Virus record (IMG/VR): IMGVR_UViG_3300029922_000001
Location: 248,001-312,000 of that record
Length of the DNA stretch: 64,000 bases
Reading direction: 5' to 3' (one strand)
Part shown: piece by piece, positions 5,911 to 63,899 of the stretch
Layout of the letters: each line of letters begins with the position of its first letter
Numbering within the stretch: the first letter of the stretch is position 1
Translations under genes and position numbers: made by a program
Notes under the pieces: generated by a model
Told to the model about the DNA's origin: nothing
Seen by the model: the letters and a program-made list of their open reading frames with translations, nothing else
The model's database searches: none

Positions 5911-6463
5911 TGACTTCCTCTATATATGCTGGTGGCACATATTCTGTTAACCATACACCATTTTCAGAACGATAAAAAACAAATCTATTCAAATCCATTT
6001 GCTTTGAATCCACCTTCAATAGTGCATACTTTCCTCTTCTAGAACCAACATTAATTGCTGTTTCTATGTTTTCAGAAAGATGAACCGCATGACGATACAT
6101 CTTCTTAATTCCTTCCTCTAAAATCATTGGTACAGCATCATATGTTGTACCATGATAAAGAATGGCAGGAGGATTCAATGGAACTAACTGAAGATCAACT
6201 TCACAAGAATGACCTTGATTGGCTCTAATTCTTGCTCCTGATTCATCATAAGAATATCTTTGCTTATTATTTTCCGTCACTAACTGATCTAAATCAGCCT
6301 TTGTGATGTTAATATTAAACTTTTTCAAACCGTCTAATAGTTGTGTTACGAATACATAACCTCCAAGATCAAGCTTTTCAACTCCAATCTTTTGTGGCTC
6401 ATGTCGCAATATTAACGAAATAAACTTTCCTATTCTTTTAAATTCACGTTCATCCTTAATCAT
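5903..6463 (-). CDS. kptA: RNA 2'-phosphotransferase (Tpt1/KptA)
   Basis: ISLILRHEP, NNKQRY, RIRANQGHS, LYHGT, RHAVHLS, SENGVWLTEYVPP. Confidence 0.95.
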   Translation of the reverse strand: MIKDEREFKRIGKFISLILRHEPQKIGVEKLDLGGYVFVTQLLDGLKKFNINITKADLDQLVTENNKQRYSYDESGARIRANQGHSCEVDLQLVPLNPPAILYHGTTYDAVPMILEEGIKKMYRHAVHLSENIETAINVGSRRGKYALLKVDSKQMDLNRFVFYRSENGVWLTEYVPPAYIEEVND

Positions 6464-7016: not shown

Positions 7017-7105
7017 AATAGATTGACCTATTATACCAGGGTATTCTTCTTCATTACAATCTTTCTCTATTCAATTTTCAATGTGCTTGAGTTTTAATTC
7101 TCGGT

Positions 7106-7150
7106 AAATAAAAAACAGGAAGTCCGACTTAGGTCTGTCGGACTTCCTGT
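7106..7150 (-). terminator. intrinsic terminator of the Thr/Ser/Cys leader (attenuator 3:4)
   Basis: 14-bp perfect stem ACAGGAAGTCCGAC/GTCGGACTTCCTGT followed by TTTTTATTT. Confidence 0.9.
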
Positions 7151-7173
7151 TGAATCTTTCTATTTGGTTTTCT

Positions 7174-7263
7174 TTATGCTTGCCCGACAACAGCATTTCT
7201 ACAGCTTCCACAACTTGTGGAACTGGTAGTACTTGATGTTGATGTTGACGTGACTAATTTCAT
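7174..7263 (-). CDS. 29-aa Thr/Ser/Cys-rich leader peptide (putative attenuator; not in ORF track)
   Basis: MKLVTSTSTSSTTSSTSCGSCRNAVVGQA*; GGTATAAT promoter upstream; terminator 23 nt after the stop. Confidence 0.85.
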   Translation of the reverse strand: MKLVTSTSTSSTTSSTSCGSCRNAVVGQA

Positions 7264-7303
7264 TTTAACCTGCTACGTTTATTATACCCAATGTTTTGAT
7301 TGT

Positions 7304-16051: not shown

Positions 16052-16086
16052 AATTTAGCCCAATCTTTTTAGGATTGGGCTAAATT
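16052..16086. terminator. bidirectional terminator hairpin between convergent genes
   Basis: AATTTAGCCCAATC / GATTGGGCTAAATT inverted repeat. Confidence 0.85.
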
Positions 16087-16088
16087 GT

Positions 16089-16781
16089 TTATTTCTTGTC
16101 AGATAAGTCTTTAGCTTCTTCTTCTGCATAAAGTAGACGATCTTCATCCTTGAAGAATGATGCATCTGACATACAAGCTGCTCCAGCTAAAGCCATACGA
16201 GAGGTTGCTTGTCCAACAGTGCTATACATAGCTCTTGTTGCACCCTTCCTATAATTAAATGAATTAGCTTGTGTTCCACCTAGCTGTTGAGCAACACCCC
16301 AAGCGTTCATGTCTGCACCCAGATAAGTGAATGTCCATTGTCCAGTAGCTTCTAATTCTGAAATCAAAGTTTTAAGCTTAGTAGTATCTTTATATTCTTT
16401 AGAAGAATTTTCATGACCATCAGTGTTAACCACTACAACAGATTTATATTCGCCTGATAGTTCATTCTTAGCTCTATAAACCGTAATACCAATACCATCC
16501 CATAATGCAGTCATGCCATTTGGAGCGTACGTATTGGTTGTTAATGGTTCTACTTCACTAAGAGGCTTATTTGCATAAACTGTAGTTACTTGATTACTGA
16601 ATTTAACGAGAGTGACATAATAAACTACATCAACGTCTTTCTTGAGGGTGTCGATATACTCATTGATACCTTCAATGAGTTCAAGTCTGACGTTTTCCAT
16701 TGAACTGGATTCGTCAAGGATCAAATATACATAAACTGGAATATTTGATGGAATCTGGGCTGTTACATTTGCTTCTACCAT
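16089..16781 (-). CDS. von Willebrand factor A domain protein
   Basis: MIDAS motif ILDESSSM; GMTALWDGI; TDGHENSSKEY. Confidence 0.92.
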   Translation of the reverse strand: MVEANVTAQIPSNIPVYVYLILDESSSMENVRLELIEGINEYIDTLKKDVDVVYYVTLVKFSNQVTTVYANKPLSEVEPLTTNTYAPNGMTALWDGIGITVYRAKNELSGEYKSVVVVNTDGHENSSKEYKDTTKLKTLISELEATGQWTFTYLGADMNAWGVAQQLGGTQANSFNYRKGATRAMYSTVGQATSRMALAGAACMSDASFFKDEDRLLYAEEEAKDLSDKK

Positions 16782-20797: not shown

Positions 20798-21694
20798 TTA
20801 TAAGAGAACTACTCTGTCCTCAATAATACTCTTTACAAAACCACCAACGTATGTGGTGAACTCTGGATTCCAATGCTTAGGCATAAATTGAGGATTCATA
20901 CACTCCACAAAGTGATTTCGCCAAAGCTTAATCATTCCTTCTGGTGTGTATTTAGCTACAATTAAGTTCCAAGTATTCTGTTCCTTATATCGCTTCTTTA
21001 ATACATACTTGCTTAGGTTTTGGTTCTTCTTTTTAATGCTTTCTTTTAGTTCTGGAGACATGCTCTTTCGAATTTCTTCTCTAGCATCATATTCTTCCTT
21101 AGCATATTTGTAAACCAAATCAAGATCCAATGGCGCACCAATCTGCTTTTCAAGCTTATTCCATAGTGCTACCCATTCATAGCTATTCATTGAAGTTTCT
21201 GAATAAACTAAATGGAAACACTGTTTCTTAAATGTGCCTCTCATAACCAAACTAGTATGTTCAACTTCACTCTTTAGCTTTGCCTTCAAAGGATTAGCAA
21301 ACTTTTGTTCATATAGTTCATGACATTCACGACAAGTTAACACTAAATCGTGTGCTTCAGCAAACTTCTTATACTTTACAGGAAAGAAATTACGTACACA
21401 TTTAGGAATAACGTGATGCCTGTCTAAATTATCTGGTCTACCGCAAACAACACACATAGTTTGTCTAGGTGTTTTGTAGATTGGGTGAGTCAAATTTAAA
21501 ATTTCGTCACTTGGTTTCTTATTGAGTTGTAATACGCAAGGTTGCTGCGATACGATTTGTCCTTTTTCGTATCTCAATAAGAGATTAGCAATACTTCTAC
21601 CTGTGTAAAAGACTACTTCATTATTTGGGTCAACGACCTTCACATTTTGATAAAATGGATTTTCGTCTGACCACCGATTTCCTTTTGAAGCCAT
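20798..21694 (-). CDS. HNH-type protein resembling the C-terminal domain of EXD2
   Basis: YQNVKVVDPNNEVVFYT; CVVCG...RHHVIPKCVRNFFP...HDLVLTCRECH. Confidence 0.7.
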   Translation of the reverse strand: MASKGNRWSDENPFYQNVKVVDPNNEVVFYTGRSIANLLLRYEKGQIVSQQPCVLQLNKKPSDEILNLTHPIYKTPRQTMCVVCGRPDNLDRHHVIPKCVRNFFPVKYKKFAEAHDLVLTCRECHELYEQKFANPLKAKLKSEVEHTSLVMRGTFKKQCFHLVYSETSMNSYEWVALWNKLEKQIGAPLDLDLVYKYAKEEYDAREEIRKSMSPELKESIKKKNQNLSKYVLKKRYKEQNTWNLIVAKYTPEGMIKLWRNHFVECMNPQFMPKHWNPEFTTYVGGFVKSIIEDRVVLL

Positions 21695-27382: not shown

Positions 27383-27484
27383 TGAGCAAACAGGGACTTG
27401 AACCCTGATGACATTTTACTGTCGATGGGTTAGCAAAATTCTGATCTTGCTAAGCCCATTGCGTCTACATTTCGCCATTCGCCC
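27383..27484 (-). tRNA. tRNA-Leu(TAG)-like gene with an 18-nt hairpin insertion in the anticodon loop
   Basis: ATGGG/CCCAT stem around CTTAG[CAAGATCAGAATTTTGCT]AA; long V-arm; A73. Confidence 0.8.
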
Positions 27485-42300: not shown

Positions 42301-42405
42301 TTGTATAACTCCTTGACTATTTACAAAATAATAACATACTAGCTATTTCCATGCAATCTTAGCTACTGGATGTTTCACTGTTTTATTGCGATGGGCTATT
42401 AAGAT

Positions 42406-42452
42406 AAAATATGTAATGTCAATGTATTTATACACTGACATTACATATTTTA
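42406..42452. terminator. AT-rich inverted repeat between the two capsid-like paralogs
   Basis: AAAATATGTAATGTCA...TGACATTACATATTTT. Confidence 0.6.
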
Positions 42453-42458
42453 TTATTC

Positions 42459-45573: not shown

Positions 45574-45927
45574 GGGCTCGTAAGGGAATCGACATGTTGC
45601 ATATATTGATGAACTTGAGTGAGAGATTACCCTTGGCTCTCTAAAAATGGGTAGAAAACATAAACGGCAAATCATATGCTTATGTAGGTTAATTCCTACC
45701 GCAAAAAATAAAGGTTAGTTGAGGACACTTTATTGAGCGTTGAAAAAATTCAACTACGCTATTAGGGTTGGTGGACCTTGGACCTGAAATAGTTAAATTA
45801 ATCAAGTATCCGGTTGCAGCGGTTTGATTTATACCAACATGCTTCCTATTAAATAAATCTACGCTCATAAAAAATAATTATTGGTATATCAGTAATGGAA
45901 ACGGCTTCGAGTGCCGTCGGGTCCACC
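45574..45927 (+). ncRNA. ssrA: tmRNA
   Basis: 5' GGGCTCG...ATCGAC; 3' ACGGC-TTCGAGT-GCCGT-CGGGTCC-A-CC with G3:U70; tag frame GGC AAA TCA TAT GCT TAT GTA GGT TAA at 45666-45692; TGGTATAAT promoter. Confidence 0.9.
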
Positions 45928-46012: not shown

Positions 46013-47233
46013 TTAGCTAAATTTATCATAACACTCACAAATTGAATGTTGTTTTGCGTATATCCCTTCAGCGGTAATAACGTCCACATTTAATGTTTCA
46101 ATATCTTCATGTTCTAGTGTGTCTTGAATATGTGTACTCAAATTAATAGGCGGTACAGGTTGTGCCCCACCAATATGAAAATGATTTTCAATTAAACTAG
46201 CCACATGTTTTCTGCGTTCTTCCCTGGCTTTTAGAATAGCATTTACTAAATTCATTTGATTACTTTGCATAGCTTCAGCCAGTGCCTGTGAATTAATATC
46301 TTTAGGTATAATCACTCCTGATGCATACAGTAATTCAATATCAAAACTTACAAATGACTCTTGTGGTAATTGACTTATAATTCTTTGGTAGTACCTTTCA
46401 ACATCTTCTAGATGTATGATAATGTCTTTAATTTCATCATTAGTAAAACCATCTTTTTTGTAAAACAATAAATTGTTATTTTTTTTATTGAAAAACATTG
46501 ATATAATTGAAATTACATCAATTTCTCTTTTTAAAGATTCTGTTGCGCTAGGTCCATATGCTGGCTCATTGGTACAAATTGTATTAGGTGGTAAACCTTT
46601 TTTAAAACTAATTACGCATTCAGGGTTACTGGTGAAAATAATTTCATTTACACTTGATCCACCAGGCATTTTATCAAATATCATTTTAAAAGAAGTGCGG
46701 CTACTACCAATAAACAAATCTTTTATGCTGTAATAAACATTATATCTAGATGTTAATGTTTTATTAGCTTCAATAAAGTTTTCCATCCATGTTGGTTTTC
46801 TATCTTTTTTAAGAGGCACTAGTTCGTAGCTCAATGTGGTTTTAACAAGATTATCCCATGAATATTTATGTAAAGAACCGTTATATATTTTAGTAAAATC
46901 TAATGTGTTTTCAGATGCTTTAGCAATTCTACTAGTTGCATAACACTCAATGCCAGTCATGTCGTCACCTGGTATGTTGAAGATTAAAGTGTAATTGTTT
47001 CGTTGTGTAGCAATAATATACTGAAGGTGAACTTGTAAATTTTCAGTATCCTCAATTGAGCAACATTGGTTTTTGTTTTGTAATAGAACTTTGGATTGAA
47101 AATTACCTTTTCCTACTAATTCTTTAATCCATTCATCTTCTATGATTTTAATCCATTCATCTACAATGAATTGTGTGGTTTGTTTGTGATAGTGTATCGT
47201 CTGATCCACTGATTCAGTTTTTTCTTTATTCAT
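46013..47233 (-). CDS. hypothetical protein
   Basis: 406-aa ORF. Confidence 0.75.
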   Translation of the reverse strand: MNKEKTESVDQTIHYHKQTTQFIVDEWIKIIEDEWIKELVGKGNFQSKVLLQNKNQCCSIEDTENLQVHLQYIIATQRNNYTLIFNIPGDDMTGIECYATSRIAKASENTLDFTKIYNGSLHKYSWDNLVKTTLSYELVPLKKDRKPTWMENFIEANKTLTSRYNVYYSIKDLFIGSSRTSFKMIFDKMPGGSSVNEIIFTSNPECVISFKKGLPPNTICTNEPAYGPSATESLKREIDVISIISMFFNKKNNNLLFYKKDGFTNDEIKDIIIHLEDVERYYQRIISQLPQESFVSFDIELLYASGVIIPKDINSQALAEAMQSNQMNLVNAILKAREERRKHVASLIENHFHIGGAQPVPPINLSTHIQDTLEHEDIETLNVDVITAEGIYAKQHSICECYDKFS

Positions 47234-47291
47234 TTTTATCCTTATTGATAGTACATTCTTGTCCTACCAATAAGGATATTATACAAATTTA

Positions 47292-47618
47292 TTAAAGATA
47301 ATAGCTTAGAAATTTAATTGTGATATCGCAATTAAAAGTTTTTTTAATTTTATTAATTTCTTCAGGAAAAGCTTGTTCTAAATTTTTAATTGATATTTTA
47401 TTTAAATTTAATTCTAACACTTGTTCTTCACTATTTTCATGATCTTTTATGTAATAATCGCCGTTATAGTTAGGCAGTAAATATAAATGATTATTTTTAG
47501 GAGAAAACACCCATAATTTTTGAAGCAATACCGTTTCTGCAAATGCAGCAAGTTCTCCATAACTTGAATTAAATACTTGAATTACTGGTCCTAAATAAAC
47601 ATTTTTCTTCATAGACAT
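47292..47618 (-). CDS. hypothetical protein
   Basis: ORF track. Confidence 0.65.
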   Translation of the reverse strand: MSMKKNVYLGPVIQVFNSSYGELAAFAETVLLQKLWVFSPKNNHLYLLPNYNGDYYIKDHENSEEQVLELNLNKISIKNLEQAFPEEINKIKKTFNCDITIKFLSYYL

Positions 47619-47633
47619 AATTAGTATTATAAT

Positions 47634-48344
47634 TTATTTGAGTGCTTTACTGTTTTTGGGGACATCAATATAGGTTGTATATCCACCATTCTTAAAGTTT
47701 GCTGAACCACCATTACAATTGATGGTTCCCATATGTCTACTGTGCGCTTTACTCATTTTAACTAGAGGATACTTAATGGTGTATTTGTAACCGTTGATCC
47801 AGTATTTTTCTTGTTCTACTTTTTCAGGATCTGGGTTTTCTTTAGCCAATTCCTCTGCCAAATCCTCTTCTGCTCTTTTAAGAGAAGCCTTGGCTTGTTC
47901 AAGAGCTTCTTCAATTTTTCTACGATCTTTAGGAGTGAGATTTCCTTTGATAGCCAATCCTTTTGCACTACCAACTTTTTTAACCACTTCTACAAATTCT
48001 TCAGTAAAGTACTCATCCCAGCAACTACCAAAATGAATTCTGCCTGAAGGCTTAACTTCGTAAACATCCCAGTCGCCTTCAAAAGCTTCTTTCCAGATTG
48101 TGTAATGTGGCGCTTCTTGCCCAGTCATATAAATAACTTCCCCGCAGTGATAGAAGTTCTTTTTGTTATGAAAAGGATTGATTCTATCTCCAGGTTTGTA
48201 TTTAGTAGGCGAAGCGTGATAGAGTTTTTGGGAGTATTTATCCTTTTCTCTCTTTTCAGCACGTTTTTCCGCTTTGATCATAGTAAAAATTATACCACAT
48301 TGGAAGCTTGAAAAGTGTCGGACTTTGTAAATAACTTCCGACAT
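47634..48344 (-). CDS. possible Arr-like ADP-ribosyltransferase-fold protein
   Basis: LYHASP...PGDRINP...IYMT...VYEVKPSG resembles Arr motifs (weak). Confidence 0.4.
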   Translation of the reverse strand: MSEVIYKVRHFSSFQCGIIFTMIKAEKRAEKREKDKYSQKLYHASPTKYKPGDRINPFHNKKNFYHCGEVIYMTGQEAPHYTIWKEAFEGDWDVYEVKPSGRIHFGSCWDEYFTEEFVEVVKKVGSAKGLAIKGNLTPKDRRKIEEALEQAKASLKRAEEDLAEELAKENPDPEKVEQEKYWINGYKYTIKYPLVKMSKAHSRHMGTINCNGGSANFKNGGYTTYIDVPKNSKALK

Positions 48345-48370
48345 TTTTCAAGTTGTGGTATACTAAGTTA

Positions 48371-48634
48371 ATGGAACGCAGGAAGATAGAAAAATGCCCA
48401 AGTTGTGATTCACCAAATATTGATCCTGGTGAGTATTGGTTTAAATACCACACTGATAGATATTTACTGTGTCATTCTTGTGGAGAAACATATGATAACG
48501 CCACTAGTGCTGAGCTAGATAGAGATATTGAACTGCGTAAACAGCGTTATCGGGAAATTGACGCTGCCCAAGAAGAAAAAGATTATCAATTGTATTTGAA
48601 ACTAAAAACTAGATTTAAGGGTAGAGATGTTTGA
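48371..48634 (+). CDS. small zinc-ribbon protein
   Basis: CPSC...CHSC; GTGGTATACT-6nt-ATG. Confidence 0.7.
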   Translation: MERRKIEKCPSCDSPNIDPGEYWFKYHTDRYLLCHSCGETYDNATSAELDRDIELRKQRYREIDAAQEEKDYQLYLKLKTRFKGRDV

Positions 48635-48926
48635 AAATATTAAAAAATGGTGGAGTCTTGAAATAAACAAAATTACATGTCCTCATGAATATGAAATTGA
48701 TTATTTCTATAGTAACGGAGTTTGCAGAGAACCTTATTATTGGTGTCCTGATTGTAAAAGGGGTATAGAACCTGAAGGTATTGAGTTTGCTCCTGGTGAA
48801 TGGCGTAATCGCACTCCAGATGATGACATCATTATTGTTCATTGGAATCCAGATGCGCCCATTTCTAAAGAATGTCTCAAAATGAGAGAAGAATTTGAAG
48901 CAACACAATATAAATGCAAGATATAA
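48627..48926 (+). CDS. small Cys-containing protein
   Basis: CPH...WCPDC. Confidence 0.65.
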   Translation: MFENIKKWWSLEINKITCPHEYEIDYFYSNGVCREPYYWCPDCKRGIEPEGIEFAPGEWRNRTPDDDIIIVHWNPDAPISKECLKMREEFEATQYKCKI

Positions 48927-48932
48927 TGAACT

Positions 48933-49202
48933 ATGGAAAAAATTCGATCAGAATATAAGATAGGTAAATTTAGTGATTTTGACAACGTTGTATTTGATTT
49001 GCAACTTGTTGAAATCGAAGGACCAGAAGGTAGTTCAAATAATGTAGTTCAAATAATGCCAAGAATTGATGGCGCTTTTCTTCAGAGAACTATTTTGTTT
49101 ATGCCAAGTCCAGAAGGTCTTCGTCGCTTAGGCAATGCATTTCTTGATTTAGCAAATGATGTAACAAATCTTGAGTCAGAGCAACTAAATTCGCAAAGTT
49201 AG
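48933..49202 (+). CDS. hypothetical protein
   Basis: ORF track. Confidence 0.65.
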   Translation: MEKIRSEYKIGKFSDFDNVVFDLQLVEIEGPEGSSNNVVQIMPRIDGAFLQRTILFMPSPEGLRRLGNAFLDLANDVTNLESEQLNSQS

Positions 49203-49217
49203 GGGTATAATACGAAT

Positions 49218-49310
49218 ATGAGACTATAGGTAACATCAAAAATATCGGTTTCCAGAGTAAGGAGGGCATTTAACATGTTGTAGAACATTATTAAATCACG
49301 TCCTCCTTAA
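49218..49310 (+). promoter_or_regulatory. leader ORF with two in-frame amber codons and RBS-sequestering hairpins
   Basis: GGGGTATAAT-7nt-ATG; M R L TAG V T S K I S V S R V R R A F N M L TAG N I I K S R P P TAA; hairpin 49312-49367 covers the next RBS. Confidence 0.65.
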
Positions 49311-49368
49311 ATTGTTTATTTCATTCGCAATTCGTCATTCTCGTGTGAATTCAAAGGAAATAAACAAA

Positions 49369-49758
49369 ATGGAACTATTAAAACAATTAAATAAAACTCA
49401 AACAGAACAATTTTTCATCAACACTAATTATAAAACTATGGTCGTTAATTGGAAACAGGCTTGTAAAGATGGCGTAGAATTAACCGTAGCTGATAATTTA
49501 TTATATACTATCATGAGAGGCAAAAGTTTGTTCAAAGCTTTTCGCCCATTATCTTCAACTAAAGCTTTATTAAGAGGTTGTGGTGAATATCAATCATACA
49601 CCAATGCTTATTATATGATTGTATATGGCAAATATAATAAGCATATTTTTGGTGATGTTAATATTAAGTCAATTCAAGCTTGTGTACCATCTGGTGGAGA
49701 TATTGATGATCAAAATGCTTTATATTATATTATAGGATGGAATAATGCATCAAAATAA
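49369..49758 (+). CDS. hypothetical protein coupled to the Pth2-like gene
   Basis: AAAGGA SD; NLLYTIMRGKS..KAFRP motif; overlaps the next gene. Confidence 0.75.
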   Translation: MELLKQLNKTQTEQFFINTNYKTMVVNWKQACKDGVELTVADNLLYTIMRGKSLFKAFRPLSSTKALLRGCGEYQSYTNAYYMIVYGKYNKHIFGDVNIKSIQACVPSGGDIDDQNALYYIIGWNNASK

Positions 49759-50068
49759 ACCACCTTATATTTACATATTTGTCCGGCAAGATATTCCTCT
49801 TGCCGATCAAATAGTCCAAACAGGTCATTCCTGTCAAGAATCAGGTGCAAAATTTGGATGTCCTGAAAATTGTCATTTGGTCTTACTAAGCTGTAAGAAT
49901 GAGCACGATCTTTTGTAGGTAGCTCAAAGATTAGAAATGAATCAAATTAAATTTATTAATTTTTTTGAGCCTGACGATCAAATGGGTTACACAGCTATTT
50001 GTACTGAACCATTAATAGATCGTCGTAATCTCTTTAGAAAATACAAACTCTGGAAATATGAGGTATAA
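49745..50068 (+). CDS. Pth2-like peptidyl-tRNA hydrolase with an in-frame TAG at codon 58 (readthrough or pseudogene; not in ORF track)
   Basis: YIYIFVRQDIPLADQIVQTGH...LVLLSCKNEHDLL*VAQRL...FFEPD..GYTAICTEP...FRKYKLW. Confidence 0.75.
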
Positions 50069-50075
50069 TTCAAAC

Positions 50076-50402
50076 ATGAAAAGAGAGTATAACTGGGAAT
50101 TAAAGGATGCTAGTCGTGGATATTGGGATGTAATTGCCACCGAACGTGGAAAATCTAATCCCAATCCCGAAAATCATTATGATCCAGGTTTCTATGAAAC
50201 CTATTGGGATGTCACAATTAAGACGCAATCTTATCAACCTAAATATGCTATTAGCTTCCAAGCTAAAAGTGATTACGATGAACCGTTGCGTATTTATCAA
50301 ATAGCGCACTATGTTCATGAACATATCATGTTGTTTTATGATGCTTGTATTCTAGAAAGTCATTCACCAACAACAAGAGTGATTTATAAGGACGTAGAAT
50401 AA
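50076..50402 (+). CDS. hypothetical protein
   Basis: GAGGTATAAT-6nt-ATG. Confidence 0.7.
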   Translation: MKREYNWELKDASRGYWDVIATERGKSNPNPENHYDPGFYETYWDVTIKTQSYQPKYAISFQAKSDYDEPLRIYQIAHYVHEHIMLFYDACILESHSPTTRVIYKDVE

Positions 50403-50405
50403 GAT

Positions 50406-50858
50406 ATGTCTGAACGTGAATTTACTCTTTTTATTACTGGACTAATTACAATAGTTATCACAATTATTGTAATTATTGGCATCATTCAAAACACCCCCAA
50501 ACGAAAAGAGGAAGAGGCAAAAAGGAAAGCATTTTTGGATGAATTTCTAAATAGCGAATATGTAAATGATAATTTCCCTGCACCATTATATATTTATCAA
50601 GTGAATCAAAGTGGTAGTAATATGATTTATCAAGCTGGTCATTGGGAGTTTATGGCTGAAGGTTATAGATACAATAATCATATGAATGAATTTTATACAG
50701 ATGGTCAAATTGTGCATTCTTTTCCTTATAACCTTGTGATTAATAGGTGTGGTGGACCATATCGAAATATGAGAGACTTTTATTTTGATCCCAAAGTTCA
50801 TAGATTTGTGACTCAAGAAAAAATGCTTAGTATGTATCAGAATAGTAAACAGGTATAA
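50406..50858 (+). CDS. N-terminally anchored membrane protein
   Basis: TM plus EFL.S...PLYI...GGPY; paralog of the next gene. Confidence 0.75.
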   Translation: MSEREFTLFITGLITIVITIIVIIGIIQNTPKRKEEEAKRKAFLDEFLNSEYVNDNFPAPLYIYQVNQSGSNMIYQAGHWEFMAEGYRYNNHMNEFYTDGQIVHSFPYNLVINRCGGPYRNMRDFYFDPKVHRFVTQEKMLSMYQNSKQV

Positions 50859-50865
50859 TAAGACT

Positions 50866-51315
50866 ATGACGGATGCTCAATTTGGAATTGAATTATGGAT
50901 TTGCGGTATTATTTGTGCGTTAGTGGTTATATCTGGTGTTTGTTCATTCATAAAAGATATAAAAAATGCTGTTGCTACTCAAAGATTAAAAGCGGAATTT
51001 TTATCTAGTGATTTCTTGCATAGAGAACTATCAAAGCCTCTTTATATTTTTCGTGTTCTGAATTCACAACGAAAAGACGCAAGCTACACTTATCTTTTAG
51101 CAAATAGTTATGAGGAAAATATAGCTGGTGGAATTAATTTTATTTTTGATGAACCCAATGATGAATATAGTACTTTGAGTTTCCCAAAGGGTTCAATTAT
51201 CTGTGAAAAAGGTGGACCATATAAAACAGCATATGAAGCTTGCGAAGACAAAACTATTACATTTTTAACTAAAGATTTATTGCTAGAAGCCTATAAAAAA
51301 CAGTATAAACCATAA
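50866..51315 (+). CDS. N-terminally anchored membrane protein (tandem paralog)
   Basis: Shares EFLSS...PLYIF...GGPY with 50406-50858. Confidence 0.75.
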   Translation: MTDAQFGIELWICGIICALVVISGVCSFIKDIKNAVATQRLKAEFLSSDFLHRELSKPLYIFRVLNSQRKDASYTYLLANSYEENIAGGINFIFDEPNDEYSTLSFPKGSIICEKGGPYKTAYEACEDKTITFLTKDLLLEAYKKQYKP

Positions 51316-51316
51316 A

Positions 51317-51565
51317 ATGGACACCGAAAAATTACCTATAAAATGGAGTGCTGTAATAATGTCTTATTACAATGCTTCAATGCAATATTATCAAAAACGG
51401 AAAGAACCTTATAACACGCTACCAACTCCAGAGCATAATTTTATTTGGATTTGGTATAGCGAACTCAATCGTTTGGATGGTCATTGTGGATGGTTAGAAG
51501 TGAATTTACATGCTGAAAAATATGGTAGATATTTTCTACAAAAGAGATATAACAACGCTAAGTGA
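51317..51565 (+). CDS. hypothetical protein
   Basis: ORF track. Confidence 0.55.
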   Translation: MDTEKLPIKWSAVIMSYYNASMQYYQKRKEPYNTLPTPEHNFIWIWYSELNRLDGHCGWLEVNLHAEKYGRYFLQKRYNNAK

Positions 51566-51579
51566 GGTATACTTATCGT

Positions 51580-51954
51580 ATGAATTTTAAGAAATTTACC
51601 ATTTTCTATTTTGATAATTTGGATGACTCTTATCAGAGTGATGAATACCTTGAAGATTTCAACAATCTTGATGAAGAAGAATATAAAGAACAGCCTCAAT
51701 CCAAACGAATCGAATGGGTTTTGAATAAGATTGAAGAAGCACAAAAGCAAGATTTGATTACAATTATTACAACTAATGATTATTGGTTTATTCGCTTAAT
51801 TGAACTTAGTGTTGAACCCGATCAATTTTGCATTTACAATGCAGGTCAAAATTGTATTGTGGATTCATTTGTAGAATTAAAACCAAATCCAACATTAGAC
51901 ATTGGTGAATACATTTTTAGAAAATCGGTAGTTAGAGCATTAAAGGGTGGTTAA
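51580..51954 (+). CDS. hypothetical protein
   Basis: GAGGTATACT-6nt-ATG. Confidence 0.65.
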   Translation: MNFKKFTIFYFDNLDDSYQSDEYLEDFNNLDEEEYKEQPQSKRIEWVLNKIEEAQKQDLITIITTNDYWFIRLIELSVEPDQFCIYNAGQNCIVDSFVELKPNPTLDIGEYIFRKSVVRALKGG

Positions 51955-52213
51955 ATGAGTAAAAAGATTTTGTTAACTGCTCATGATGCGACGATCCTTT
52001 CACTCGTAGTCCGCTCGGCGGGCGTAAAGTTAGAACTTAGGGAACGGCTTCTCAGCCGGGGATCTGAGCAGATCCAACGGATCGGTCGTTACTATATTTC
52101 CAATCAAGAGCCTTTAACTGAGGCTGAAAAAAACCGGGCGGAAGAGCTGAAAAAAGTTCTGCTACGCTAAATTAAAGGGTGGTTAAATGAATAAAAAGAT
52201 TTTGTTAACTGCT
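51939..52213 (+). repeat. 43-bp direct repeat (51939-51981, 52171-52213; 1 mismatch) flanking a GC-richer insert
   Basis: ATTAAAGGGTGGTTAAATGARTAAAAAGATTTTGTTAACTGCT appears twice. Confidence 0.95.
51955..52170 (+). CDS. 71-aa chimeric ORF (duplicated gene start plus foreign sequence)
   Basis: MSKKILLTA matches MNKKILLTA of the next gene; the rest is unrelated. Confidence 0.6.
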   Translation: MSKKILLTAHDATILSLVVRSAGVKLELRERLLSRGSEQIQRIGRYYISNQEPLTEAEKNRAEELKKVLLR

Positions 52214-53317
52214 GGTCCAATTCCAGCAAGATTAGATTCGGTAAAATATATTACTAATCGTTTTAAGGGCGGTTTAGCAATGACTTTAGCCAAAGATTTA
52301 GTTCAATATGGACACGATGTTACCGTTGTAGCATGGAAGCATTCAGGAATTGCCTTTGACGGTTTGCATAGCCCAAGTAACTTCTTGTACGTTGATGATG
52401 TTTATGACTACTATAATAAGGTTTTGAATTTTAAAGCAGATGCTTACATTTTGGCAGCGGCTGTAGCTAATCTTGGACCATTAAATCCAATAGAAGGTAA
52501 ATTCCCTTCTCATAAATATAAAGAGGGCGATGTATTCTCTATTGATTTTACGATTATGCCTAGAGTTATTGATGCAATCAAATCGAAGTATCCAACATCT
52601 ACATTGATTGCCTATAAGCTATTTGATGGCACCGAAGAAGAATTAATTGAAGCCGCAAGACATACTCTTTACGATAGCAAAGCTAATGTGGTGTTTGCAA
52701 ACAGTCCTATTACAGCTAAAAATCAAAAGATTGTAGTTACGCCTGATGGTTCAACATTCAAGGTTGACTTTAAACAACATGTTGAGTTAATTCAAGAAAT
52801 GTTAAACCTAAAACATTATGGTACTAGAATCTTAGATGAATTTTGGTATACAACCAATCAAGATGATAAATACATTATTGATAATTATCCAAGAACCAAG
52901 ATTATGGATATGACATTTGGCACGTTTGCTATTCGCAATCGGGAAGATGATGGTTTTATTACAACAACTAGAGGAAAGAAAACTGGTGAACATGACACTG
53001 CTTATGTTCAAAAAGTAGATCATGATACATTAACTGTGTATGCCAGTCAAAAGGCAACATTAAATGCGCCACTTCTTGACATGGCTTTCAGATTGAATCC
53101 TAATATCAAGTATTTGATTCATGATCATAAATTTTATGCAGATGCAAATTATCAATATAATGATTACGCATTCCCAGGTACAACACAAGATAACCAGGTC
53201 GCTCATAAAGTAGATGCTGATCATTTTATGTGGATTTTGCCGCATCATGGGTATCTTGCTGGTTTTGAAGATTATAGGGATTGTGTTGATTTTATTGGTA
53301 ATGTTAGGAAAATATGA
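52187..53317 (+). CDS. CoaB-like (DFP C-terminal) ligase fused to a class II aldolase-like domain
   Basis: LLTAGP...DSVKYITNRFKGG...YILAAAVAN...LIAYKL...VVFAN; C-terminal FITTTRGK...ATLNAPLL...LIHDH. Confidence 0.7.
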   Translation: MNKKILLTAGPIPARLDSVKYITNRFKGGLAMTLAKDLVQYGHDVTVVAWKHSGIAFDGLHSPSNFLYVDDVYDYYNKVLNFKADAYILAAAVANLGPLNPIEGKFPSHKYKEGDVFSIDFTIMPRVIDAIKSKYPTSTLIAYKLFDGTEEELIEAARHTLYDSKANVVFANSPITAKNQKIVVTPDGSTFKVDFKQHVELIQEMLNLKHYGTRILDEFWYTTNQDDKYIIDNYPRTKIMDMTFGTFAIRNREDDGFITTTRGKKTGEHDTAYVQKVDHDTLTVYASQKATLNAPLLDMAFRLNPNIKYLIHDHKFYADANYQYNDYAFPGTTQDNQVAHKVDADHFMWILPHHGYLAGFEDYRDCVDFIGNVRKI

Positions 53318-58285: not shown

Positions 58286-59314
58286 ATGATGAAACTAGAT
58301 AGACAAGCCTTTAATGAAGCGGTAAGGAAGCGTGACAAAGATCAATGTGTCATGTGTAAATCACCAGCAAGCGAAGTTCATCACATTATCGAACGCAAAC
58401 TTTTTGTGGATGGTGGCTATGTTATGGATAATGGTGCCACATTATGTGGTGACTGCCATCTGAAAGCTGAACAAACAATTATCAGTGCGAAACAAATTAG
58501 ACTGGCTGCTGGTATTACGAATGTGGTGCTTCCTGAAGGTGTTGGTGACGATACAGATTTTGATAAATGGCTCAATCCAGTATTAACAAACAATAGAAGA
58601 TTAAAAGGTCCACTGTTTGAGACTGAACAAGTTCAAAAGGTTTTAAAGGATGCAAATCTATTGGATCTTTTTGATGATTATCTCAAATATCCAAAAACAC
58701 CGCATTTGTGGTATTCTAATACTTCTAGTGATGATAAATATATTGAATCAATGAGAATTATTGAAAATGAAGAAATTGTAGTTACTGAAAAAATGGACGG
58801 AGAATCACTAACTTGGTATTCAGATGGCTATTATCATGCACGTAGTTTAAGCGGTCGGGGAGGGGAAGATAGAAGCCTTGCCGCTGCGATAGCGAATCAA
58901 ACACAGTACGATTTACCCAAAGGTTGGCGTGTTTGCGCTGAAAACGTTGTGCGACAACATTCTATTGTTTATAAAAATTTAAACAGCTTTATATATGTTT
59001 ATTCTATTTGGGATGAAAATAATAATGCTCTTTCTTGGAAAGAAACAGAAGAATGGTGTGAACTATTAGGTCTAACTACTGTTCCTGTTTTATATAAAGG
59101 TAAATATAATAAAGAATTCATTCATTCATTATACTCTCCAGTAAAAGAAAATGGAGATGAAATGGAAGGTTATGTTATTCGCGTGGCTAGATCATTTCAT
59201 TTTAGTGAGTTTAGTCAGTGTATCGTAAAATGGGTTAGAAAAAATCATGTTAATAAAGACAGTAAACACTGGAGATATTCGGCAATTAAGAATAATTCAT
59301 TAAGTTTTATTTAA
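58286..59314 (+). CDS. HNH-domain / ATP-dependent RNA ligase fusion
   Basis: CVMC..ASEVHHI...NGATLCGDCH; KYPKTPHL, motif I TEKMDG, AEN, EGYV, KWVRKNHV. Confidence 0.88.
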   Translation: MMKLDRQAFNEAVRKRDKDQCVMCKSPASEVHHIIERKLFVDGGYVMDNGATLCGDCHLKAEQTIISAKQIRLAAGITNVVLPEGVGDDTDFDKWLNPVLTNNRRLKGPLFETEQVQKVLKDANLLDLFDDYLKYPKTPHLWYSNTSSDDKYIESMRIIENEEIVVTEKMDGESLTWYSDGYYHARSLSGRGGEDRSLAAAIANQTQYDLPKGWRVCAENVVRQHSIVYKNLNSFIYVYSIWDENNNALSWKETEEWCELLGLTTVPVLYKGKYNKEFIHSLYSPVKENGDEMEGYVIRVARSFHFSEFSQCIVKWVRKNHVNKDSKHWRYSAIKNNSLSFI

Positions 59315-62395: not shown

Positions 62396-62740
62396 ATGAT
62401 CTTAACTGATATCGAAATTTATAGTTGTTGTATTTTTGGACAAAATTATACATTTATTGAACACTCCAAAAAGAATATTAAATTATGGAAACAACTTCTC
62501 GTTGCTTTATCTGAAAGAAATATTCGTTTTGAAATTAATTCATCTGAAGGTAATGATAAATACAATGATGACTGTTATTGTTTTCTTAATGATTATAAAA
62601 CTACAATTTATGTGTTAGATAATTACAGTATTTGCTATCCTTTGATGGATGGAGAATCATGTGATTGGGAAATCGGATCATTTAAGAAATTAATGAATTT
62701 TATTGATAATTTTAAAGATCATCCAGCTAGAAAGATTTGA
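62396..62740 (+). CDS. hypothetical protein
   Basis: TGTGGTATGCT upstream. Confidence 0.6.
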   Translation: MILTDIEIYSCCIFGQNYTFIEHSKKNIKLWKQLLVALSERNIRFEINSSEGNDKYNDDCYCFLNDYKTTIYVLDNYSICYPLMDGESCDWEIGSFKKLMNFIDNFKDHPARKI

Positions 62741-62762
62741 TCTAAGGTATACTGTTTTCATT

Positions 62763-63899
62763 ATGAAACGAATCGGAGAATTTCCACAAAAAGAAGAAGT
62801 GCTTAAGCTATTGAGGACGACTGAAAAATCGCTTGTTTGTAAACTTGGTGTCGATCCTACAGCAACTGAGGTTACTTTGGGGTGGGCTGTCGTTTTACGC
62901 GAACTAAAGCGTTTACAAGTGTGTGGTCACAGTATCACATTAATTATTGGCGATTTTACGGCTGGCATTGGTGATCCTACAGGTAAGAGCAAAACTCGTG
63001 TACCATTGACACACCAACAAATTAATGATAATGTCAATGCGTTATTACCACAGATTTTTACTATTTTAGATCCTACAAAGACTTCTGTTAAGTTTAATTC
63101 TGATTGGTTGGCTTGTAAGTCATTTGCTGAAATGATGCGTATTATGGCAAATATTACTGTTCAACAAGCTTTGAATCGTAATGACTTCCAGAATCGTTTA
63201 GAAGACAATGCACCCGTAGGATTACATGAAATTATGTACCCTGTTTGTCAGGCTTTGGATTCGGTACATATTTGGGCAGATATTGAAATTGGTGGAGAAG
63301 ATCAATTATTTAATGTTATGATGGGTAGAGATTTAATGAAGCAAATGGGTATGAAACCTCAGTTGCCGTTACTTTTCCCATTGCTTTTAGGTGTTGACGG
63401 TACGCATAAAATGAGCCAAAGTCTTGGTAATTTTATTAGTATTCGTGATACTCCTGAAGATATGTTTGGTAAAACGATGTCGATTCCAGATAGTGCTATG
63501 CCTAACTGGTTCCATTTGCTTACTGATATTTCTTTTGAGTCTGCACAGAAGGAAAATCCTAGAGATACTAAATTAATTTTGGCTGAAGAGATTGTACGTC
63601 AATTCCACGGATTTGAAGCAGCAACTTTGGCAAAAATTAATTTCATCAATAGGTTTACTCATAAGATTGTAATGCCTACTGAAATTCTGGGTTTTTCTAG
63701 AGAGGATGCAAATGAATCTTGGATGACAATTCTTGAAGAAGCTTTACCAGGAGAAAGCAAGAATAACCTTAAAAGATTGGTTCAACATAAGGGAGTGAGG
63801 TTGAACGGTACACCAATTGAGAGTGTGAAGGATTTCCCAGAGGAAGGGATTTTGACAATTGGGAAACTAAGAGCGTGGAAAGTAGAGAGTTACGATTAA
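62763..63899 (+). CDS. tyrS: tyrosyl-tRNA synthetase (HIGH motif appears as TLGW, KMSKS as KMSQS)
   Basis: KLGVDPTA, IIGDFTAGIGDPTGKSKTR, HEIMYPVCQALDS, EIGGEDQLFN, KMSQSLGN, S4-like tail. Confidence 0.95.
   Translation: MKRIGEFPQKEEVLKLLRTTEKSLVCKLGVDPTATEVTLGWAVVLRELKRLQVCGHSITLIIGDFTAGIGDPTGKSKTRVPLTHQQINDNVNALLPQIFTILDPTKTSVKFNSDWLACKSFAEMMRIMANITVQQALNRNDFQNRLEDNAPVGLHEIMYPVCQALDSVHIWADIEIGGEDQLFNVMMGRDLMKQMGMKPQLPLLFPLLLGVDGTHKMSQSLGNFISIRDTPEDMFGKTMSIPDSAMPNWFHLLTDISFESAQKENPRDTKLILAEEIVRQFHGFEAATLAKINFINRFTHKIVMPTEILGFSREDANESWMTILEEALPGESKNNLKRLVQHKGVRLNGTPIESVKDFPEEGILTIGKLRAWKVESYD

What the first reader, a model, noticed from the sequence alone, without database searches (positions are those of the whole stretch)
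49202..49372. Amber-readthrough-sensing leader controlling an occluded RBS
Seen in sequence: GGGGTATAAT is followed by a leaderless ATG at 49218 and one frame with TAG at 49227 and 49281, both after a Leu codon, ending in TAA at 49308-49310. A long hairpin (TAAGGAGG 49258-49265 with CCTCCTTA 49302-49309) hides an internal SD and ATG-TTG-TAG minigene. Right after the TAA, TTGTTTATTTC (49312-49322) pairs with GAAATAAACAA (49357-49367), between the AAAGGA SD and the ATG at 49369. Inference: only a ribosome that reads through the ambers reaches the TAA and melts this helix, switching on the operon. TAG is an ordinary stop elsewhere (941, 5572, 11836, 21716, 42459), so readthrough would be conditional, for example on low RF1 or a suppressor tRNA.
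Basis: partly seen in the sequence, partly recalled or inferred. Interest (0 to 1): 0.8.

Follow-up and report, generated by a model that had tools for sequence, protein, structure and literature searches.

The report
Amber-readthrough-sensing leader in a huge phage
A 166-base gap between two genes of a 441-kb peat phage holds a tiny gene interrupted by a UAG stop codon; only ribosomes that read through it reach the hairpin hiding the next gene's start, so the gap looks like a sensor for stop-codon suppression, and a second huge phage that carries suppressor tRNAs has the same device.

Summary
The interpretation gained independent support.

- **Start module.** GTATAAT-N6-ATG is this genome's general promoter and leaderless-start module. 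There are 55 copies in 90.6 kb, and 51 of them open real ORFs.
- **Neighbouring gene.** The second gene downstream (49745-50068) has a PTH2 peptidyl-tRNA-hydrolase fold and an in-frame TAG at 49916. About 10 of 12 jumbo-phage loci, and 17-18 of 27 homologues beside tRNA(CUA) genes, carry an in-frame TAG, usually at codon 2-9.
- **Conserved leader.** The only homologue of the ORFan at 49369 lies in a lake huge phage, beside a tmRNA and two tRNA(CUA) genes. Its leader is built the same way. It has a strong SD and ATG TTG TAG, then in frame ...ATT...CGT CCN CCT TAA (Arg-Pro-Pro-stop). The stop abuts a helix of different sequence that hides the gene's start.
- **Constrained folds.** In both phages only a ribosome at the TAA opens that helix.

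Best reading (about 0.55): an amber-suppression-sensing translational leader. It is untested, there are only two instances, and no suppressor tRNA was found in the 90.6 kb of this genome that I could read. Rivals: ordinary promoter, terminator and RBS hairpins; a bar-like minigene.

The parts
48933..49202 (+). Upstream ORF (89 aa, no homologues). It starts with its own TATAAT-N5-ATG module and ends in TAG 49200-49202, in the same frame as the leader ORFs.
49206..49220 (+). TATAAT (49206-49211), a 6-nt spacer and ATG 49218: a canonical copy of the genome's -10-only promoter and leaderless-start module.
   Evidence: There are 55 modules in 90.6 kb and only 4 are followed by an ORF under 30 codons; this is one of the 4.
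49218..49229 (+). First mini-ORF, ATG AGA CTA TAG (M R L amber), probably at the 5' end of the transcript. I did not look for it in the second phage.
   Evidence: for the second phage's leader stretch
49258..49309 (+). Hairpin 1 (-18.8 kcal/mol). The perfect SD TAAGGAGG pairs with CCTCCTTA, and the apical stem holds ATG TTG TAG. The tail AAATTGTTTATTTC is the same 15-mer that follows a clear terminator at 16057-16095.
49275..49310 (+). Conserved amber-gated leader ORF: ATG TTG TAG AAC ATT ATT AAA TCA CGT CCT CCT TAA (M L amber N I I K S R P P stop). SD TAAGGAGG lies 9 nt upstream.
   Evidence: The lake phage L004 has ATG TTG TAG GTC ATT CGT CCG CCT TAA.
49312..49367 (+). Hairpin 2 (-13.7 kcal/mol). 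Its 5' arm starts 2 nt after the TAA. Its 3' arm covers the spacer and part of the SD of gene 49369.
49369..49758 (+). Regulated gene 1: a 129-aa protein of unknown function. Its only homologue is L004 4185-4628.
49745..50068 (+). Regulated gene 2: a PTH2-fold (peptidyl-tRNA hydrolase 2-like) gene whose start overlaps the end of gene 1. It has an in-frame TAG at 49916-49918 (codon 58).
45574..45927 (+). Phage tmRNA gene 3.8 kb upstream (context). The lake phage has tmRNA, two tRNA(CUA) genes, this leader and the PTH2-like gene within 3.8 kb.

Best explanation
The gap 49203-49368 is the translational leader of a two-gene operon, made of an ORFan and a PTH2-like peptidyl-tRNA hydrolase. It reports whether UAG is being suppressed.

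Proposed sequence of events (all steps here are inferred):
1. A -10-only phage promoter (TATAAT 49206-49211) starts the RNA at or near A49218.
2. The RNA folds into hairpin 1, which buries a perfect SD and the ORF ATG TTG TAG, and hairpin 2, which buries the ribosome site of gene 49369.
3. Ribosomes that enter the leader frame stop at UAG when release factor 1 wins. Entry is at the 5'-terminal AUG, at the SD-led AUG 49275, or by running on from ORF 48933. From a UAG stop they are too far from hairpin 2 to affect it.
4. When a suppressor tRNA(CUA) decodes UAG, they continue to ...Arg-Pro-Pro-UAA (49308).
5. A C-terminal Pro-Pro slows termination, so the ribosome pauses there. Its leading edge covers 49312-49322, the 5' arm of hairpin 2.
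6. The ribosome site of 49369 is freed. The ORFan is then translated, and through the overlapping start at 49745 so is the PTH2-like gene. That gene needs one more amber readthrough at codon 58.

Shown: the sequence features, the genome-wide start module, conservation of the leader design in a second phage, the conserved amber in the PTH2-like family and its linkage to tRNA(CUA) genes, and the in-silico opening of the helix.

Inferred: where transcription starts, that the leader ORFs are translated, that readthrough occurs in this phage, the Pro-Pro pause, and the coupling to the downstream genes.
For: (1) Start module. TATAAT-N5-7-ATG occurs 55 times in 90.6 kb, and 51 copies open ORFs of at least 30 codons. 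21 of the 50 that open long ORFs have no same-strand gene end within 200 nt. One divergent pair shares a 26-nt gap with no room for a leader.

(2) Conserved leader. The lake phage L004 (= L146) has AGGAGG, 8 nt, ATG TTG TAG GTC ATT CGT CCG CCT TAA, followed at once by the arm TCATATTTGTA. That arm pairs with TACAAATATGA, which covers the start ATG of the ORFan homologue. The 23- and 22-base patterns find only these two phages in 2.9 million viral contigs, plus one GC-rich hit, with roughly 0.4 to 1.4 expected by chance. The helix-2 arms differ in sequence but pair in both phages. The one difference in the Arg-Pro-Pro codons (CCT/CCG) is synonymous and weakens hairpin 1, which points to a coding constraint.

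(3) Constrained folds. The unpaired probability of the 3' arm is 0.03 when free, 0.03 with a ribosome at either UAG, and 0.80 with a ribosome at UAA. In L004 the values are 0.02, 0.01 and 0.80, and its AUG goes from 0.00 to 0.58.

(4) Amber suppression is real biology here. The PTH2-fold gene (pLDDT 91.8; PTH2 structures at TM 0.70-0.76) has TAG at a variable alignment column, and every invariant residue downstream is kept. Nine of 12 jumbo-phage loci start SD-ATG-1 or 2 codons-TAG-conserved body. 27 of 117 loci chosen only for a tRNA(CUA) pattern carry the gene 88-9452 nt away, and 17-18 of those have such a TAG. 23 of 24 distinct amber contexts are followed by a purine, as are all four TAGs here.

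(5) L004 carries two tRNA(CUA) genes and a tmRNA 0.8-1.6 kb upstream of its leader.

(6) A C-terminal Pro-Pro interferes with termination and arrests ribosomes in every context tested (PMC3834316).
Against: Only two independent instances exist, so there are no covariation statistics.

The ORFan homology is weak: 38% identity over 55 aa, pairwise E = 9e-8.

No tRNA(CUA) and no release-factor gene was seen in the 90.6 kb of the 441.5-kb genome that I could read.

The leaderless first mini-ORF has not been shown to be conserved.

TAG is an ordinary stop for 12 other genes in the window, and there is no other in-frame TAG in 64 kb.

The conserved CGTCCNCCTTAA could be kept as the anti-SD arm of an RNA hairpin rather than as codons.

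Hairpin 1 followed by a U-rich tail also fits a plain terminator.

The gene's SD is only half occluded in the window.

There are no RNA, ribosome or protein data.
Confidence: 0.55

Rival explanations
1. Ordinary intergenic signals. An internal promoter is followed by an intrinsic terminator or RNA-stability hairpin (hairpin 1) that ends the upstream unit, and by a separate RBS-masking hairpin for the next gene. That second hairpin would be opened by ordinary means. The TAGs are plain stops, and ATG TTG TAG is kept only because it lies in a conserved SD:anti-SD hairpin.
For: The 15-mer after hairpin 1 is identical to the tail of a clear bidirectional terminator at 16057-16095. Structured gaps are common in this genome. 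So is an SD-masking hairpin, for example 47234-47291 with z = -8. The frame staying free of TAA and TGA for 35 codons is not unusual: other TAG-ending ORFs run on for 24-33 codons.
Against: This does not explain several conserved details in two phages whose helix-2 arms do not match in sequence: the in-frame ATT...CGT CCN CCT TAA after the TAG, the synonymous CCT/CCG change that weakens the hairpin, and the stop abutting helix 2. It also does not explain the link to an amber-gated gene and to tRNA(CUA) genes. An ATG exactly 6 nt after the TATAAT is about a 5% coincidence.
Confidence: 0.2
2. A transcription-attenuation variant. Hairpin 1 is a terminator, and a ribosome that reads through the ambers while RNA polymerase is nearby prevents it from forming. 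Readthrough would then raise transcription, not only translation, of 49369 and the PTH2-like gene. This can coexist with the best explanation.
For: The terminator-like tail. No TATAAT module lies between 49218 and 50061, so both genes depend on RNA that passes hairpin 1. A ribosome at UAG 49281 or at UAA 49308 disrupts hairpin 1.
Against: The U tract is interrupted (UUAAAUUGUUUAUUU). L004's hairpin 1 is weak (-10.6 kcal/mol) and is followed directly by helix 2 rather than by a U tract. The conserved abutment is on helix 2, not on a terminator.
Confidence: 0.1
3. Bar-like minigenes. The very short ORFs with strong start signals (M-R-L-stop and M-L-stop) exist to load ribosomes and release or drop off short peptidyl-tRNA-Leu. 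This would tie up host tRNA or ribosomes, and the neighbouring PTH2-like hydrolase would deal with the product. Readthrough would be irrelevant.
For: The format is a strong SD or leaderless start, 2-3 codons and a stop, next to a peptidyl-tRNA hydrolase-fold gene. The phage carries its own tRNA-Leu genes. Minigene literature: PMC2490762 and PMC8708949.
Against: The minigene's SD and AUG are buried in hairpin 1 (unpaired probability 0.02). The conserved in-frame continuation to Arg-Pro-Pro-TAA has no role in this model. The stop is always TAG, as in the amber-gated PTH2-like genes.
Confidence: 0.08
4. TAG is simply a sense codon in this stretch. The region would then encode protein: a 36-residue C-terminal extension of ORF 48933 (125 aa in all), or a 30-aa peptide from ATG 49218.
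For: One frame runs from 48933 to 49310 with three TAGs and no TAA or TGA.
Against: The extension has no homologues. It has no similarity to the PTH2 N-terminus: score -1.7, and 485 of 2000 shuffles score as well. The window is otherwise standard-coded. Only the part from ATG 49275 onward is conserved in L004.
Confidence: 0.05

Closest known systems
Translational attenuation leaders of ermC, cat and cmlA (leader peptide plus RBS-masking hairpin)
   Same: A short leader ORF with its own ribosome site. The downstream gene's ribosome site is held in a helix. A ribosome positioned at a particular place in the leader frees it.
   Different: The input there is a drug-stalled ribosome and a swap between alternative helices. 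Here the input would be decoding of UAG, and the terminating ribosome melts the helix directly. I found no alternative-helix swap.
Translational coupling through RBS-occluding structure (RNA phage MS2 coat to replicase/lysis; many operons). From general knowledge.
   Same: A ribosome finishing an upstream ORF opens the structure that hides the next start.
   Different: The upstream ORF here is a 3-codon ORF unless its amber is suppressed, so the coupling is conditional on readthrough.
prfB (RF2) autoregulatory frameshift and tnaC (termination stall at Pro-UGA). From general knowledge.
   Same: An in-frame stop codon early in a short reading frame is used as a gauge of termination efficiency. 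tnaC uses a Pro-stop termination pause.
   Different: Those respond to RF2 or tryptophan and act through frameshifting or Rho. Here the read-out would be UAG readthrough by a phage suppressor tRNA and unmasking of a ribosome site.
Stop-codon-recoded phages (TAG read as Gln; bioRxiv 10.1101/2021.08.26.457843, PMC9523058)
   Same: Phage-encoded tRNA(CUA), with in-frame TAGs proposed to time gene expression.
   Different: Those genomes carry TAG throughout blocks of late genes. This window is standard-coded. TAG appears in-frame only in one gene and in its operon's leader, and it still ends 12 other genes.
Lambda bar and other minigenes (PMC2490762, PMC8708949)
   Same: A strong start, 2-3 codons and a stop; a link to peptidyl-tRNA hydrolase biology.
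   Different: Here the minigene is buried in a hairpin and continues in frame to a conserved Arg-Pro-Pro-stop after the amber.
5'-terminal AUGs on leadered mRNAs (5'-uAUG; PMC4965119)
   Same: An AUG at the predicted 5' end of an mRNA that also has a leader and an SD-led gene. Such AUGs bind 70S ribosomes and can affect the downstream cistron.
   Different: That work is on E. coli mRNAs. Here the 5' end is only predicted, and the uORF ends in an amber after 3 codons.

Membership tests
Leader-peptide translational attenuator (erm/cat type) | Short leader ORF with its own ribosome-binding signal | tested here: met
   TAAGGAGG, 9 nt, ATG 49275; and the TATAAT-N6-ATG module at 49218. L004 has AGGAGG, 8 nt, ATG.
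Leader-peptide translational attenuator (erm/cat type) | Ribosome site or start of the regulated gene sequestered in a helix | tested here: met
   3' arm 49357-49367 has unpaired probability 0.03. The L004 AUG has unpaired probability 0.00. The SD itself is only half paired in the window.
Leader-peptide translational attenuator (erm/cat type) | Ribosome at a defined leader position frees the ribosome site | tested here: met
   In silico only. Occupancy at UAA raises the unpaired probability to 0.80 in both phages; occupancy at either UAG does not.
Leader-peptide translational attenuator (erm/cat type) | Mutually exclusive alternative helices (1:2/3:4 versus 2:3) | tested here: not met
   No convincing 2:3 pairing. 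Only weak AT-rich alternatives, I3, I4 and I7. The mechanism would be direct melting.
Leader-peptide translational attenuator (erm/cat type) | Regulation demonstrated in vivo | not testable with these tools
   No reporter, toeprint or RNA data. Read laying gave DNA contigs only.
Intrinsic (Rho-independent) terminator, for hairpin 1 | G+C-rich stem directly followed by a U tract | tested here: inconclusive
   The simple scan did not call it. The stem base GGAGG/CCUCC is followed by UUAAAUUGUUUAUUU. The same 15-mer follows a clear terminator at 16057.
Known RNA families (riboswitch, T-box, tRNA, sRNA) in Rfam 15 | Match to a curated covariance model | tested here: not met
   Only chance microRNA-precursor hits far below threshold (19 vs 58 bits) in 49100-49500. 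No tRNA-like match.
Bar-type minigene | Strong start signal, 2-3 sense codons and a stop | tested here: met
   ATG AGA CTA TAG and ATG TTG TAG.
Bar-type minigene | Peptidyl-tRNA accumulation or toxicity when Pth is limiting | not testable with these tools
   Needs expression in a pth(ts) strain.
Stop-codon-recoded phage genome (TAG as sense) | Many genes with in-frame TAG, and ORFs lengthened genome-wide when TAG is read | tested here: not met
   Standard code gives dense ORFs. The only convincing in-frame TAG in 64 kb is 49916.
Stop-codon-recoded phage genome (TAG as sense) | Phage-encoded tRNA with anticodon CUA | tested here: inconclusive
   None in contig 229741-320365, which is 90.6 of 441.5 kb. 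Present in L004, L009, ME3 and GAP32.
PTH2 peptidyl-tRNA hydrolase family, for gene 49745-50068 | PTH2 fold | tested here: met
   AF2 pLDDT 91.8. Foldseek hits 2zv3, 1q7s and 1rlk at TM 0.70-0.76, probability 1.00.
PTH2 peptidyl-tRNA hydrolase family, for gene 49745-50068 | Sequence membership (Pfam or NCBIfam model) and hydrolase activity | tested here: not met
   No Pfam, NCBIfam or PDB sequence hit; only PHROG 34073, of unknown function. Activity was not tested. I call it PTH2-like, not PTH2.

The most novel reading that the evidence does not exclude
Jumbo and huge phages carry a previously undescribed amber-gated circuit. A phage tRNA(CUA) would license, by readthrough, (i) a PTH2-like hydrolase gene that almost always begins ATG-1 to 3 codons-TAG, and (ii) in at least two huge phages a dedicated leader peptide (M-L-amber...R-P-P-stop). 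The paused terminating ribosome of that leader would unmask the next gene. This would give the first targets for the 'orphan' suppressor tRNAs of jumbo phages. Papers on XacN1 and RsoM2USA report no identified targets (PMC5852040, PMC8504454). It would also be the first natural riboregulator whose input is stop-codon suppression.
Probability: 0.5. Interest if true: 0.85.

Novelty: new variant of a known kind. Interest (0 to 1): 0.8.

Why it matters
Leader peptides that unmask a ribosome site are a classic device. None is known whose signal is the decoding of a stop codon.

If this reading is right, it shows how a standard-coded phage can use a suppressor tRNA as a switch rather than as a wholesale change of code.

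It would also supply concrete target genes for the amber suppressor tRNAs that jumbo-phage papers list without targets. The amber-gated PTH2-like gene is unannotated or N-terminally truncated in at least eight of the ten GenBank loci I checked (BF, pEa_SNUABM_19, CBB, GAP32, XbC2, RsoM2USA, fHe-Yen9-03 and ME3).

It links three parts of translation quality control that these phages carry side by side: suppressor tRNA, tmRNA and a peptidyl-tRNA-hydrolase-like enzyme.

It also offers a compact natural part for amber-suppression reporters.

Tried and rejected
- **Close relatives.** I looked for relatives to test conservation. megablast against phages found nothing. The search for related loci with both flanking proteins, in viral and metagenome contigs, found only the source contig. 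Word-index and full HMMER searches found no homologues of the 129-aa or the 89/125-aa proteins. tblastn of both ORFan homologues against cultured phages found nothing.
- **Strain variation.** Reads and contigs from four peat runs were identical, with no variants.
- **Known RNA family, tRNA or riboswitch in the gap.** None.
- **Leader as a decayed 5' end of a PTH2-like gene.** Rejected. The HMM score is -1.7 and 485 of 2000 shuffles score as well.
- **Second in-frame TAG gene at 22165-20798.** Rejected. It is two genes: an HNH endonuclease gene with its own TACAAT-N7-ATG start follows the TAG.
- **Global TAG recoding of the window.** Rejected.
- **The odd tRNA at 27383-27484 as the suppressor.** Rejected. 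No way of reading its loop gives a canonical CUA anticodon loop.
- **Finding the genome's suppressor.** Walking the contig covered only 90.6 kb.
- **Function of the 129-aa protein.** The Atlas model is poor (pLDDT 0.41) and there is no credible family.
- **L147.** A GC-rich pattern hit judged to be chance.
Full report
**Source and setting.** The window is part of a 441,498-bp viral contig from a peat metagenome (IMGVR_UViG_3300029922_000001 = Ga0302280_1000004). Window position equals contig position minus 248,000. The DNA is about 33% G+C and densely coded under the standard code. It encodes 10-11 tRNAs, a tmRNA, IF3, TyrRS, RNA 2'-phosphotransferase and ribosomal protein L7/L12. The finding lies inside a run of + strand genes starting near 48353. 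It sits between an 89-aa ORF (48933-49202) and a 129-aa ORF (49369-49758).

**Check of the observation.**
- TATAAT is at 49206-49211 and ATG at 49218.
- TAG is at 49227 and 49281, each after a Leu codon.
- TAA is at 49308-49310.
- TAAGGAGG pairs with CCTCCTTA, and TTGTTTATTTC pairs with GAAATAAACAA.

The gap folds at -37.9 kcal/mol (z = -2.85, 1 of 200 shuffles as good). The two hairpins are -18.8 and -13.7 kcal/mol. Other gaps of this genome are as structured or more so, so the fold alone would not single the region out.

- The leader frame is also the frame of ORF 48933, whose own stop is the TAG at 49200.
- The second gene downstream has an in-frame TAG.

An independent assembly and three other peat samples give identical sequence across 47300-52800. 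That rules out an assembly error, but it also means there is no strain variation to exploit.

**The start module is genome-wide.** About a third of the genes have an exact TATAAT 5-7 nt before their ATG and no Shine-Dalgarno.
- In the window, 47 TATAAT-N4-8-ATG sites exist and 35 of the N5-7 sites open ORFs of at least 48 codons.
- In 90.6 kb of the contig, 55 N5-7 sites exist and only 4 are followed by fewer than 30 codons. One of the four is 49218.
- There is no -35 element; the consensus is g-TATAAT-A-r-A.
- The module also heads operon-first genes. One divergent pair has starts only 26 nt apart.

This fits a -10-only promoter that gives leaderless mRNA. In jumbo phage AR9, transcription starts 6 nt after an AT-rich element, and the authors note that phage transcripts are often leaderless (PMC5312081). 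In 17 junctions the upstream gene's TAA lies inside the TATAAT, so a role in coupling cannot be excluded. It is followed, almost uniquely, by only three codons.

**The neighbouring gene shows that amber readthrough is biology here.** ORF 49745-50068 reads as one 107-codon gene with TAG at codon 58. I read it with X at the TAG.
- PHROG 34073 aligns across the TAG (E = 1.9e-12, against 2.6e-7 for the C-terminal half alone).
- 45 full-length homologues span it. The TAG column is variable, and all eight invariant residues downstream are kept.
- The model (pLDDT 91.8) matches PTH2 peptidyl-tRNA hydrolases at TM 0.70-0.76. No sequence family claims it, so I call it PTH2-like.

tblastn finds the gene in 35 cultured or assembled jumbo phages, often with no gene annotated under the match. 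In the loci I examined, the gene begins with a good SD, ATG, one or two codons, TAG, and then the conserved body in frame with no start codon between. This holds for the following.
- ME3: ATG ACT TAG.
- BF and pEa_SNUABM_19: ATG ACG CAC TAG.
- XbC2, CBB, GAP32 and fHe-Yen9-03.
- RsoM2USA: ATG TTG TAG.
- The 595-kb LR756511 genome.
- A lake huge phage, L004: ATG AGC TAG, identical in five assemblies.

RaK2 and L009 lack the amber. The window's gene has CAA (Gln) at that column and its TAG further on.

tRNA(CUA) genes lie close to the gene.
- ME3: 450 nt upstream.
- GAP32: 3 kb away.
- L004: two copies beside a tmRNA.
- L009: one copy.

Of 117 viral loci picked only by a tRNA(CUA) pattern, 27 carry the gene 88-9452 nt away, and 17-18 of those have M-x(1-8)-TAG starts. 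In 23 of 24 distinct contexts the amber is followed by a purine. From memory, that is the context known to favour suppression. The four TAGs at 49200, 49227, 49281 and 49916 are all followed by G or A. Papers on XacN1 and RsoM2USA state that targets of their CUA suppressors could not be identified or were left open (PMC5852040, PMC8504454). In the library searched I found no paper describing this gene as a target.

**Comparative evidence for the leader itself.** The 129-aa protein has one detectable homologue, L004 4185-4628 (38% identity over 55 aa, pairwise E = 9e-8). It lies in the same operon as L004's amber-gated PTH2-like gene, downstream of the tmRNA, two tRNA(CUA) genes and two tRNA-Lys genes. 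Its leader reads as follows.
- AGGAGG at 4070-4075.
- ATG TTG TAG at 4084-4092.
- GTC ATT CGT CCG CCT TAA, with the TAA at 4108-4110.
- Immediately after, TCATATTTGTA at 4111-4121, which pairs with TACAAATATGA at 4178-4188. That arm contains the start ATG at 4185.

The window has TAAGGAGG, ATG TTG TAG, AAC ATT ATT AAA TCA CGT CCT CCT TAA, and two nt later the 5' arm of helix 2.

Conserved between the two phages:
- the strong SD;
- Met-Leu-amber;
- an in-frame Ile;
- Arg-Pro-Pro-stop;
- the abutment of the stop on a helix that hides the next start.

Not conserved: the helix sequence, which pairs in both phages, and the length of the middle of the peptide. The one difference within Arg-Pro-Pro (CCT/CCG) is synonymous and introduces a mismatch into hairpin 1. 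That favours a coding constraint, meaning that the codons after the TAG are read.

Pattern scans with 22 and 23 specified bases find only these two phages in 2.9 million viral contigs, plus one GC-rich hit that I judge to be chance.

**Behaviour in silico.** I blocked the about 31 nt a ribosome would cover and refolded.
- Window: the 3' arm of helix 2 is unpaired with probability 0.03 when free, 0.03 with a ribosome at UAG 49227, 0.03 at UAG 49281, and 0.80 at UAA 49308.
- L004: the values are 0.02, 0.01 and 0.80, and the start AUG goes from 0.00 to 0.58.

A C-terminal Pro-Pro interferes with termination and arrests ribosomes 'in all genetic contexts tested', with accumulation of peptidyl-prolyl-tRNA (PMC3834316). 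This would prolong the open state. It also gives a reason for a peptidyl-tRNA-hydrolase-like enzyme and a tmRNA to be nearby.

**Proposed mechanism and what is inferred.** Transcription starts near A49218. Leader ORFs are entered at the 5' AUG, at AUG 49275, or from ORF 48933. They end at UAG unless tRNA(CUA) reads it. Readthrough carries the ribosome to Arg-Pro-Pro-UAA, where it pauses on the 5' arm of helix 2 and frees the ribosome site of 49369. The PTH2-like gene, whose start at 49745 overlaps the end of 49369, follows by coupling and needs one more readthrough. Output would therefore rise steeply with suppressor activity.

The following are inferred, not shown:
- the transcript start;
- translation of the leader;
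- suppression in this phage;
- the pause;
- the coupling.

No tRNA(CUA) was found in contig 229741-320365. The other 351 kb could not be read.

**Rivals.**
- Ordinary promoter, terminator and RBS hairpins (0.2). The tail after hairpin 1 is the same 15-mer that follows a clear terminator at 16057.
- Transcriptional attenuation through hairpin 1 (0.1). This is compatible with the main model.
- A bar-like minigene (0.08).
- Plain TAG-sense coding of an extension (0.05). The extension has no homologues and is not conserved upstream of ATG 49275.

**Verdict.** The mechanism class (leader peptide, RBS unmasking) is known, while the proposed input (stop-codon suppression) is new. Confidence is moderate because there are only two instances and no experiment.

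Noticed in passing
Loci L004, L019-L028 and L029-L145 (other phages); window 49745-50068: A PTH2-fold gene in jumbo and huge phages usually starts SD-ATG-1 to 3 codons-TAG-conserved body and sits near tRNA(CUA) genes. 27 of 117 tRNA(CUA) loci carry it, and 23 of 24 distinct ambers are followed by a purine. GenBank records leave it unannotated or N-terminally truncated. It is a likely target of the 'orphan' jumbo-phage amber suppressors.
   Followed up: yes
whole window and contig 229741-320365: TATAAT-N5-7-ATG with no -35 and no SD heads about a third of the genes (55 sites in 90.6 kb, 51 on real ORFs). This suggests -10-only promoters that give leaderless mRNAs, in a phage that also encodes its own IF3 and at least one sigma-like protein (end of L018).
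   Followed up: partly
window 27383-27484 (-): A Leu-type (long variable arm) tRNA found by Rfam but not by ARAGORN. It has 21 extra nt in the anticodon arm that extend the stem by about 7 bp (TTAGCAA/TTGCTAA), or else form a very short intron. The phage encodes RNA 2'-phosphotransferase (Tpt1, 5903-6463) and an RNA ligase-domain protein (about window 58286-59314).
   Followed up: partly
window 7017-7303 (-): GGGTATAAT, then a 30-codon ORF MKLVTSTSTSSTTSSTSCGSCRNAVVGQA, then a strong terminator (-27 kcal/mol, U6). It lies just upstream of the IF3 gene and beside the Thr, Ser and Cys tRNA cluster. It could be a small Ser/Thr/Cys-rich peptide (RiPP-like) or a leader peptide.
   Followed up: no
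window 47234-47291 (-): A very stable hairpin (-20.9 kcal/mol, z about -8) whose 3' arm holds the SD of gene 46013-47233. A TATAAT sits at its 5' edge, so a transcript started there would lack part of the 5' arm. This resembles the early/late control of T4 gene e (from memory).
   Followed up: no
L009 2705-2778: Next to a tRNA(CUA), ARAGORN calls a tRNA with a four-base anticodon, UCUA. That is complementary to UAGA, the commonest amber context (TAG followed by A in 17 of 24).
   Followed up: no
window 62703-63899 (+): A phage-encoded tyrosyl-tRNA synthetase (TIGR00234, 271 bits), with no tRNA-Tyr in the window. Whether it serves a suppressor tRNA is unknown. ME3's CUA tRNA resembles phage tRNA-Gln.
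   Followed up: no
window 20798-21694 (-) and 42301-42458 (-): An HNH endonuclease gene sits directly after, and in frame with, a TAG-terminated gene, so the pair looks like a readthrough gene but is not. Separately, there is a perfect 22-bp hairpin in the gap 42301-42458 (z -5 to -6).
   Followed up: partly
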